Assembly (NCBI RefSeq): GCF_002571385.2
Contig: NW_019217975.1
Coordinates: 20,255-84,254, forward strand
From: Stylophora pistillata
Lineage: Eukaryota
Length of the DNA stretch: 64,000 nucleotides
Direction: 5' to 3'
The notes below the pieces were generated by a model, which was given only the letters and a program-made list of their open reading frames with translations, had not been told where the DNA came from and searched no databases. Position 1 is the first letter of the stretch. Every line of letters starts with the position of its first letter. A program made the position numbers and the translations under genes. Of this stretch, positions 14,116-16,149 are shown piece after piece.

Positions 14116-15601
14116 GGTGAAAATTACAGCAAATAAGGATTAAATGTTTGGAACTTTGACAACCAACTGCTTAATACAAGTTTTACAGTAACTGTACTTT
14201 ACAATTACCAAACCCTATAAATCCTTGGAAAATAGTTTCAATTACCACCATAACTTTTCCCTTGCAGTCATGCTTACAGGAAATCATTAATTTTGTCACT
14301 ACTGATGACACTGTTCTCGCAGTAGTTTTGCAAAGCACAAATACTTTTTTCCAGTTATCCTATAGTATATGATTGCACAAGTCACATGGAAGGTACATTC
14401 CTCTAGGTATGGGGACTGACATTTCAATTACCTCAGCAAACTGTAATCATTAGAATTACATTAGCCAATATGTACACTAAGTGGCCAAAATTCTCAAGTC
14501 ACCTTTGTTACAGTCAAACTCACTCCACTTCAGCTGGACCATCCAGTTAGGTGTGAAAACCAAAAATATTACTCATATATTCATAAATTAACTGAATCGA
14601 TAATAGTTAATTTTTTTTAAACCAGCGTCTTGAATGGTATTCCAGAAACAGTACATGATGTTGGAGAGGAAGAAACATTAAGTTAATATTGAAACATATT
14701 CCATTCAAAATGAAAATTTTTTGGTGGATGTTGCGAGAACATCTGTAAAGCTATTACCATTAGGGAACAGTAAAATAAGAATTCAAAACATTTAAACTAA
14801 ACCAGTTTGGAATTAAAATCCAAAATTTAACCTTCGTCTTTTCCTACTTTTATTTTATTTTACATACCACAAACTAATTACCAAACCAAGTGTCTTCAAA
14901 TTTGCTAATTTAATCGGCCACTTCGGTGTGATATTTCTGATGCTGTGAACTTTTTTGTACACAAGGCGTAGGCTAAGGGTGCAATATAGCAGTTAGTCTT
15001 AATCGACATTTTGTAAAAAGGAATTAAAAGCTTTAAGGTGTAGTCAATTCTAAATTGTTCACAAGCTTACCTCTTCGGGAGGTTTGCAGCTCAGTTGCGG
15101 CTCATTCTTTTCTCGAAGCTTGTCCTGCCCTGCGTCTACGAATTCTATATTACCACCTCATCCGTTCTCCCTTGTAGCTAAGAATCAAATCTCCATTGGT
15201 AAGAGATCTGAATTTCGGCATTCAAGCCATGGCATAAAGATGTAGGTAAACAGAAAGAAAATCGCGAAGACAAAACGACCGGGCGCGTACCTCCACGAAT
15301 AATTTTCGCACTAGAAAACTACTCTAAACGGATTTTTACAATACATATTAGAACGCACGATTCTTTTCATCGTTGCTGTCGCGCTCTTTTAATGACTTTT
15401 TCAATCGCTTTATAAATTCAAAATCTTAAAAGAAAGAGAATTCATCGCTGTAGATTTTGTTGTTGTTACCTCACAAATTGACCAATCATATCCACTCGTT
15501 TGGTTATTTCAAATCGAGTGGATGTGATTGGTCAAAAATTCCCAAAGTACAGGATGTGATTGGCTCACACTCAAGAGAAGATTAGCATATTTCTCTCCCA
15601 C

Positions 15602-15774
15602 GGTGGGCGCCTATTCTTCTCTGTTGAGATCCCTGTGGTAAACAAAAGCACAGGCCACTCGCAAAGAAAGAAATACGCAAATCAATTCATCTTTATATTA
15701 CTAATTAAGAATTTGTTGATAGAAGACTTTCGAAAATTTTATAAAGCAAAACAGAGAAGAAAGGATTAAGAACA
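15602..15774 (+). mobile_element. Miniature (173-bp) non-autonomous Dada-like element
   Basis: TCCCAC(15596-15601)-N13-TCTTCTCTG(15615-15623)...CAGAGAAGA(15752-15760)-N14-TCCAAC(15775-15780): a perfect 9-bp subterminal inverted repeat with a 5/6 direct repeat at U6-like spacing. Confidence 0.62.
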
Positions 15775-16149
15775 TCCAACAAACTTGTTTCTCACTGCAT
15801 GCTATATTCGGGGCTTGGGACATTATACAGTTATATTTGTTCTCTGTGAAGGAATTTTGAGACTTATGTTAAGGAACTGTAGCAAAACGATTGGAGTCAC
15901 ACTGAGAAAAGCTCTCGAATGCCGTATTTGTGATCCACATGTGCATTTGACTGTAAGCGCGCGCCACGTATTCAAGCGCGATCCAAACGAGTACCGGCGA
16001 GAGCCCCGCGCTGTGCGCTGCTAGCGCGCGCCACACGTTCAAGCCCGATCGTGGACTCTTGCGAGAGCACTGCGCTTTGCGCCTCTATGCTTCAAAATTC
16101 ATCACAGATATTGGCTGCCATAATTTTTATCGTTCATAAAAATTACAAC

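What the first reader, a model, noticed from the sequence alone, without database searches (positions are those of the whole stretch)
15573..15780. 173-bp mini-element inserted into the U6-mimicking end of a larger element
Seen: aAGAGAAGA-ttagcat..(N14)-TCCCAC-N13-TCTTCTCTG...CAGAGAAGA-N14-TCCAAC. The N14 spacing equals that in real U6 (CAGAGAAGA-N14-GCGCAA, 23803-23775), but the duplicated hexamer is not GCGCAA. Inference: targeting depends on the 9-mer at a fixed distance rather than on the cut sequence, and each element end recreates a new target, allowing chains. This would define near-minimal cis requirements for a site-specific transposon.
Basis: partly seen in the sequence, partly recalled or inferred. 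Interest (0 to 1): 0.8.

Follow-up and report, generated by a model that had tools for sequence, protein, structure and literature searches.

The report
Old Dada-U6 transposon ends, joined end-to-end
The 173-bp stretch carries the published end signature of Dada-U6 transposons and lies against the U6-like end of another such relic, but the junction arose once, long ago, was then copied along with its flanks, and shows no sign of moving on its own.

Summary

It is not a new principle. TCTTCTCTG/CAGAGAAGA sub-terminal inverted repeats, at the distance the U6 gene's own CAGAGAAGA keeps from the GCGCAA duplication, are the published hallmark of Dada-U6 transposons (Kojima & Jurka 2013).

New here:
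- The left end (15601-15623) matches the terminal 14 nt plus 9-mer of canonical Dada-U6 ends recovered from 20 metagenome contigs.
- A Dada transposase pseudogene lies next to a paralogous copy.
- The host appears to be a coral.

The 173 bp is not shown to be a mobile unit:
- The genome holds only 5-6 copies, 68-99% identical.
- All carry the same right flank; four have the same left partner.
- No empty site or empty allele was found.
- The hexamer match falls to 3-4 of 6 when ancestral states are inferred.
- An equally good unit is a 1,045-bp stretch (15601-16645) bounded by 25-nt inverted ends.

Verdict: a relic end-to-end array of a known family. The targeting rule and the "minimal cis requirements" remain untested. 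The scan's only earlier notes are two first-reader notes on this same window.

The parts
15060..15595 (+). End region ('X module' with 'XL' terminus) of a larger Dada-U6-type remnant. It finishes with AAGAGAAGA (15573-15581) plus 14 nt and contains the U6-identical 15-mer AGAGAAGATTAGCAT (15574-15588).
   Evidence: Other copies of the module lie at 16662-17230(-) and 20130-20685(-), and in contigs C882 and C201. The 20130 copy abuts a U6 3' fragment at GCGCAA.
15596..15601 (.).
   Evidence: Paralogs read TCCCTC, TCTCTC and TCCCTC.
15601..15623 (+). Canonical Dada-U6 terminus: CGGTGGGCGCCTAT plus TCTTCTCTG.
   Evidence: 10-11 of 14 nt identical to the ends of L066, L070 and L079. The TTGAG after the 9-mer also occurs in L062 and L067.
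15602..15774 (+). The 173-bp stretch called a mini-element (35% G+C, no ORF).
   Evidence: There are 5-6 copies in the genome, all within the same composite.
15752..15774 (+). Possible second end: CAGAGAAGA plus 14 nt.
   Evidence: The 9-mer is the consensus of the six paralogs. Canonical elements have no such inner 9-mer: one near-hit in 9.5 kb.
15775..15780 (.). TCCAAC, the proposed second copy of the target duplication.
   Evidence: 5 of 6 match to TCCCAC in this copy. Paralogs read TCCAAT, TCCAAT, ACCAAC, TTCAAC and TTAAAC.
15781..16324 (+). Flank that accompanies the 173 bp in every copy. The part 15887-16090 resembles 19752-19885 and 23402-23535, which lie downstream of U6.
16325..16645 (+). 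Short X module ('X(S)') ending in TAAAGAAGA (16623-16631) plus ATGAGGGTCTTCCG (16632-16645). This is the inverted counterpart of the 15601-15625 end, so 15601-16645 is a 1,045-bp unit with 25-nt inverted ends.
   Evidence: In the C201 copy the two ends match 24 of 25.
16646..16661 (.). 16-nt spacer of the sister junction. Read on the minus strand, GCGCCT follows directly after the 14 nt of the next end.
16662..17230 (-). Second copy of the U6-like XL end and X module, facing the unit from the right.
20084..20129 (-). U6 3' fragment (GCGCAA to the T run), abutted at 20130 by a third XL end (20130-20685, minus strand).
23738..23846 (-). Intact U6 snRNA gene, the natural target.

Best explanation
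This is an old, immobile relic of an end-to-end array of Dada-U6 DNA transposons in what appears to be a coral genome. Shown: the end of an internally deleted Dada-U6-type copy (to 15595) carries a U6-like CAGAGAAGA plus 14 nt. After a 5-6-nt spacer comes a canonical Dada-U6 terminus (15601-15623). The two 9-mers face each other 33 nt apart, almost the geometry of a Dada-U6 insertion in a real U6 gene (34 nt). Inferred: a Dada transposase once joined the two ends, treating the first element's end as if it were the U6 target. The element that begins at 15601 is one of two things. It may be a self-contained 173/174-bp miniature ending at 15774. Or it may be a 1,045-bp internally deleted element ending at 16645 with 25-nt inverted ends, of which the 173 bp is the terminal part. 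The data do not decide between them and both may hold (a chain). The junction formed once. The whole 2.7-4-kb composite was later duplicated to at least three other loci and has since decayed.
For: The published Dada-U6 definition matches: no long terminal inverted repeats, 9-bp sub-terminal repeats TCTTCTCTG/CAGAGAAGA at the distance found in U6, 6-bp GCGCAA duplication, tandem arrays known for Dada-U1. Twenty metagenome contigs with canonical U6|Dada junctions give terminal 14-mers (e.g. aggcgggcgcgtat, tggaaggcacgcat) homologous to CGGTGGGCGCCTAT here. One of those elements (L063) encodes a protein matching Pfam DUF6729 at 1.7e-51. A 112-aa pseudogene 45% identical to it lies at C882:51346-51672, about 2.4 kb from the U6-like end of the C882 paralog. 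A copy of the same U6-like end abuts U6 positions 65-104 exactly at GCGCAA (20124-20130). Paralogs at C882, C201 and C2470 share the junction and both flanks at 68-99% identity, with similar divergence inside and outside the 173 bp. The junction is fixed in three samples.
Against: No intact autonomous partner with these ends was found, and no transposase remnant lies in the window itself. The transposase pseudogene is linked to the array only by proximity. The spacer is not GCGCAA. The flanks of the 1,045-bp unit are mirror images, not direct repeats. The right end of the 173 bp resembles no other end in the genome beyond the 15 of 16 repeat. The 33-nt spacing is one nucleotide short of canonical. 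Copy counts from the genome search are lower bounds.
Confidence: 0.75

Rival explanations
1. One reading: a self-contained 173-bp Dada-U6 miniature transposed into the U6-like end of the larger element, guided only by the 9-mer 14 nt upstream, duplicating a non-canonical hexamer.
For: Exact inverted 9-mers extended to 15 of 16. 14 nt then TCCAAC on the right against TCCCAC on the left, 5 of 6, P about 0.007 for this copy. Canonical elements lack an inner 9-mer, so the right-hand one looks like a true end. The left end is canonical.
Against: All 5-6 copies share the right flank and none stands alone. No empty site or allele was found. Ancestral hexamers match only 3-4 of 6, P 0.05-0.2. The C2470 copy pairs two units that each include the flank beyond 15774, so the unit that rearranged there was larger than 173 bp. 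The right end's 14 nt match no other end.
Confidence: 0.35
2. The 173 bp is only the terminal part of a 1,045-bp internally deleted Dada-U6 element (15601-16645) with 25-nt inverted ends. The inner CAGAGAAGA is left over from an older nested or tandem partner.
For: The inverted ends match 24 of 25 in the C201 copy and 18 of 25 here and in C882. One end region plus an X module at the other end is what a deletion derivative should look like. The 173 bp always travels with this longer stretch.
Against: There is no direct target duplication; the flanks are mirror-symmetric. This unit also has no independent copies. It leaves the exact inner 9-mer and its 14-nt plus hexamer geometry as leftover or chance.
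Confidence: 0.35
3. The palindromic junctions were made not by ordinary insertion but by alternative transposition or inverted duplication at transposon ends, as known for Ac/Ds of the related hAT superfamily, followed by small deletions.
For: The composite is two-fold symmetric: U6-like end, spacer and canonical end on the left, and their mirror image on the right. Head-to-head pairs of the canonical end occur in C2470 (34 nt between 9-mers) and C201 (29 nt). Distances between facing 9-mers vary (21, 29, 33, 34, 44). An 11-nt indel equals the reverse complement of the neighbouring end.
Against: The modal 33-34 nt equals the canonical insertion geometry, which simple fold-back duplication does not predict. 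The spacers are not palindromic.
Confidence: 0.25
4. Chance pair of 9-mers in single-copy DNA.
For: None beyond the small size of the motif.
Against: Expected about 0.001 per 300 nt. The 9-mer is ancestral in six copies. The adjacent 14 nt are homologous to canonical Dada-U6 ends.
Confidence: 0.02

Closest known systems
Dada-U6 DNA transposons (Kojima & Jurka 2013, PMC3706591; Kojima 2022, PMC8869645)
   Same: [quoted passage not shown] A homologous terminal 14-mer. One copy of the U6-like end abuts U6 at GCGCAA. A Dada-type transposase remnant lies nearby.
   Different: The junction studied is not in a U6 gene and its hexamers are TCCCAC/TCCAAC. The copies are old and few. The host appears to be a coral, whereas the U6-targeting lineage is reported from chordates, arthropods, molluscs and annelids. 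In this family one end mimics U6 over 15 or more nt, and another pair of ends forms a true 25-nt inverted repeat.
Dada-U6N1_DR, the internally deleted non-autonomous derivative of zebrafish Dada-U6_DR
   Same: A non-coding derivative that keeps both ends and inserts at the same kind of site.
   Different: Dada-U6N1_DR keeps 231 bp plus 1,567 bp of its parent and is found in U6 genes. The 173-bp stretch shares only about 25 nt with other ends here, and its mobility is unproven.
Tandem Dada-U1A/U1B arrays in zebrafish (Kojima & Jurka 2013, Fig. S3 as described in the text)
   Same: Dada elements lying end to end, separated by one copy of the target duplication or by nothing.
   Different: There the spacer is the canonical GCGAAT within U1 gene arrays. 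Here the spacer is TCCCA(C), outside any snRNA gene.

Membership tests
Dada-U6 transposons | [quoted passage not shown] | tested here: met
   Exact copies at 15615-15623 and 15752-15760.
Dada-U6 transposons | 9-mers about 14 nt from the target duplication, as in U6 | tested here: met
   14 nt on the right and 13-14 on the left. 33 nt between facing 9-mers against 34 in 15 canonical junctions; five canonical junctions of one family have 17 nt.
Dada-U6 transposons | Terminal sequence homologous to known Dada-U6 ends | tested here: met
   CGGTGGGCGCCTAT against aggcgggcgcgtat / tggcaggcgcgtat / tggaaggcacgcat: 10-11 of 14, plus a shared TTGAG after the 9-mer. The right end could not be compared because no canonical right ends were recovered.
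Dada-U6 transposons | Insertion inside U6 with a 6-bp GCGCAA/GCGAAA duplication | tested here: not met
   For the 173 bp the flanks are TCCCAC/TCCAAC and there is no U6 gene. It is met on one side for a sister copy of the larger element at 20124-20130.
Dada-U6 transposons | Dada DDE transposase encoded by the element or by a partner in the genome | tested here: inconclusive
   No coding capacity in the window. An N-terminal-domain pseudogene (45% identity to a canonical element's protein, three stops) lies at C882:51346-51672, and exons at C201:403190-409235. The DDE core was not examined for lack of a reference.
Miniature inverted-repeat element (MITE-like non-autonomous transposon) | Many copies with the same boundaries in different flanking DNA, each with its own target duplication | tested here: not met
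   5-6 copies, all with the same right flank, four with the same left partner. No empty site was found.
Miniature inverted-repeat element (MITE-like non-autonomous transposon) | Insertion polymorphism or an empty allele | tested here: not met
   Contigs of three samples from two studies all carry the filled form. Contigs show presence, not absence of rare alleles.

The most novel reading that the evidence does not exclude
Dada-U6 transposase finds its site by reading CAGAGAAGA about 14 nt upstream, whatever the hexamer it cuts. Every Dada end is then itself a target and chains build up. A 173-bp element with little more than two 23-nt ends would be enough to be moved.
Probability: 0.15. Interest if true: 0.55.

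Novelty: new member of a known kind. Interest (0 to 1): 0.32.

Why it matters
Dada is the only known eukaryotic DNA-transposon superfamily with strict sequence-specific targets, and it has been proposed as a base for targeted gene delivery. How it recognises its site is not known.

These relics add circumstantial support for the 2013 suggestion that the sub-terminal 9-mer takes part in target choice, because ends lie against other ends at the spacing seen in U6. They would extend the U6-targeting lineage to a cnidarian.

They do not define a targeting rule or a minimal element. That needs younger copies or an assay.

A practical by-product: Pfam DUF6729 can be annotated as the N-terminal domain of a Dada-U6 transposase.

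Tried and rejected
- Genome-wide search with the 173 bp alone, with 241 bp around it and with its right flank: only the same composites.
- Exact facing-9-mer pattern across the genome: only this site and one unrelated palindrome.
- Metagenome scan for the mini's left end: no match.
- Viral-contig scan for canonical right junctions: no match. Right ends of other Dada-U6 families could therefore not be compared.
- Is the inside of the 173 bp a diverged inverted copy of the U6-like end region? No (z = -0.2).
- Is the canonical end derived from the U6 3' half? Not significant (P about 0.4).
- Pfam on all local ORFs: nothing.
- tblastn of the canonical Dada N-terminal protein against the window: nothing.
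- An intact 828-aa DUF6729 ORF on contig C67 was checked as a possible autonomous partner. It is not in a U6 context and has no 9-mer ends. The Atlas look-up gave only unnamed cnidarian clusters.
- No canonical-type ends lie near the other transposase remnants.
- I first read the X module as holding the first exon of the transposase (ATG ... GAG|GTAAG). The orientation of the C882 pseudogene does not fit that reading, so I leave it open.
- No stretch written N was filled.
- A Dada transposase from the papers' supplements was not typed in, so the DDE core was not searched.

Full report
**What is in the sequence.**
- AAGAGAAGA at 15573-15581, then 14 nt, then TCCCAC at 15596-15601.
- 13 nt, then TCTTCTCTG at 15615-15623, then 128 nt.
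- CAGAGAAGA at 15752-15760, then 14 nt, then TCCAAC at 15775-15780.

The window's intact U6 gene (23738-23846, minus strand; Rfam 114 bits) has CAGAGAAGA, 14 nt, GCGCAA. The exact 9-mer occurs only at these three places in 64 kb. A second copy within 300 nt has a chance of about 0.001. The two ends of the 173 bp match over 15 of 16 positions, not just nine.

Contigs from three samples of two studies cross both junctions with no difference, and none shows an empty form. The runs holding this DNA are labelled as one coded organism and as coral metagenomes. I therefore take the host to be a coral; this is an inference.

**What is already known.** Kojima & Jurka (2013, PMC3706591) defined Dada-U6 by these features:
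- insertion in U6 with a GCGCAA/GCGAAA duplication;
- no terminal inverted repeats;
[quoted passage not shown] They also describe tandem Dada-U1 copies separated by one duplication or by nothing, and internally deleted derivatives. The 2022 follow-up argues that Dada reads the primary sequence around the cut, reports an off-target insertion, and lists the U6 lineage from four phyla, not Cnidaria.

**Direct test of family membership.** I scanned public metagenome contigs for a U6 5' part followed by 8-20 nt and TCTTCTCTG. Twenty contigs from other eukaryotes matched. Fifteen have 14 nt and five (one family) have 17 nt. Their terminal 14-mers (aggcgggcgcgtat, tggcaggcgcgtat, tggaaggcacgcat, aggaaggtgcgcaa) are plainly homologous to CGGTGGGCGCCTAT at 15601-15614, and to CGGAAGGCGCCTAT in the paralogs. 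Two families also share TTGAG after the 9-mer.

So 15601-15623 is a genuine Dada-U6 terminus. With a 14-nt end the spacer is TCCCA, and the facing 9-mers are 33 nt apart against 34 in canonical insertions.

One of these canonical elements (L063) encodes a protein that matches Pfam DUF6729 at 1.7e-51. In the coral genome this domain occurs as follows:
- as a pseudogene at C882:51346-51672, 45% identical over 112 aa with three stops, about 2.4 kb from the U6-like end of a paralogous copy of this very structure;
- as exons at C201:403190-409235.

Finally, another copy of the U6-like end (20130 onward) abuts a U6 3' fragment exactly at GCGCAA. That is the published junction.

**Is the 173 bp a mobile unit?** The genome search finds only five other places: C2470 (85%, up to 99% over its left part), C201 (two places), and C882 (two places).
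- Homology runs straight across both proposed boundaries.
- Four copies have the same U6-like end on the left.
- All six, including an inverted one in C2470, have the same right flank (TCCAAY-AAACTTGTTTCC...).
- The whole window segment 12750-16786 is paralogous to C882:51053-46474, and a shorter stretch to C201:345633-343447, at about 70-76%.
- Divergence is similar inside and outside the 173 bp.
- The right flank has no independent copies either.

The junction therefore formed once and was copied with its surroundings. No site exists in which the U6-like end is followed directly by the right flank.

The hexamer match of 5 of 6 holds only for this copy and its close relative. The other junctions read TCCCTC, TCTCTC and TCCCTC on the left, and TCCAAT, TCCAAT, TTCAAC and TTAAAC on the right. 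By parsimony the ancestral match was 3-4 of 6, P about 0.05-0.2.

**A competing unit.** The canonical end at 15601-15625 has an inverted counterpart at 16621-16645.
- In C201 the two match 24 of 25.
- The 1,045 bp between them hold the 173 bp, its constant flank and a short copy of the X module. That is what an internally deleted element would look like.
- The unit is flanked on both sides by U6-like ends in mirror image, without a direct duplication.
- In C2470 two units that include the flank beyond 15774 lie head to head, with 34 nt between their 9-mers.

In favour of the 173 bp as a unit of its own: canonical elements have no second 9-mer within 600 nt of their end, with one near-hit in 9.5 kb. 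I cannot decide between the two units, and a chain of both is possible.

**The targeting inference.** Facing ends occur at 33 nt (four copies of one ancestral junction, plus the same junction with a different partner in C882) and at 34 nt (C2470). They also occur at 21, 29 and 44 nt.

The 44-nt junction (16623-16684) differs from the one studied by an 11-nt indel. It has GCGCCT directly after the 14 nt of the U6-like end. The non-canonical hexamer at 15596 could therefore be secondary.

The 17-nt family shows that the spacing can vary in nature. The data fit 'ends attract ends'. They do not show that the hexamer is irrelevant, and they rest on very few independent events.

**State of the family.** It looks extinct here.
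- Only three intact U6 genes and one fragment were found (a lower bound).
- No insertion lies in an intact U6.
- No coding capacity lies near the ends in the window.

**Verdict.**
- It is a relic end-to-end array of a known family, and a new host record if the coral assignment holds.
- The 173-bp miniature and the 9-mer-only targeting rule are possible but untested.
- The two earlier notes of the scan (s1-788354, s1-788392) are on this same window and agree with the Dada reading.

Noticed in passing
L063:2925-4000 (metagenome contig Ga0208226_1001709); C882:51346-51672; C201:403190-409235: Pfam DUF6729 (PF20499, 'unknown function') is the N-terminal domain of the transposase of a canonical Dada-U6 element (1.7e-51 and 1.4e-26). 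The coral genome holds degenerate copies. No paper in the library mentions DUF6729.
   Followed up: partly
L056:4809-7295 (contig C67:17808-20294, + strand): Intact 828-aa ORF with a weak DUF6729 match (26.2 bits, just under Pfam's 27-bit cut-off), a VDDCCH motif and a C-terminal OTU-protease-like region. It is not in a U6 context and has no 9-mer ends. It could be a different Dada-like transposon or a domesticated gene.
   Followed up: partly
L060, L068, L069, L071, L073: One natural Dada-U6 family has 17 nt (aagaagaaggagaacac) instead of 14 between the GCGCAA duplication and TCTTCTCTG. The 'same distance' rule is therefore not universal.
   Followed up: no
window 17231-23780: Two tandem units of about 3.6 kb (88-93% identical). 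Each starts with the U6-like end and finishes with a U6 3' part plus ttgcgc. The second joins the 5' part of the intact U6 at 23775-23780, so an intact U6 is kept.
   Followed up: partly
window 15856: A 22-bp stretch is left out in one contig each of three samples: an indel allele or a paralog just right of the finding.
   Followed up: no
C882:47926-48896 (paralog of window 15692/15693): The C882 copy of the 173 bp is split by an insertion of about 970 bp, flanked by a repeated stretch of about 14 nt. A second extra piece of about 260 bp follows the right flank.
   Followed up: no
C201:343707-343780: A 54-bp tandem duplication of the canonical end plus the first 45 nt of the X module, next to an isolated inverted copy of the left 110 bp of the 173-bp stretch (343621-343695).
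   Followed up: partly
window 17600-18480: This part of the 3.6-kb unit matches 25 or more other contigs at 64-77%. It is an unrelated interspersed repeat embedded in the unit.
   Followed up: no
window 6255-6561 and 7239-8018: Two arrays of a 16-bp satellite (GGGAATCTTTAAAAGC-like) in inverted orientation, about 850 bp apart.
   Followed up: no
whole genome: Only three intact U6 genes (C192, C388, C72) and one fragment were detected. That is few targets for a U6-specific transposon; the count is a lower bound.
   Followed up: no
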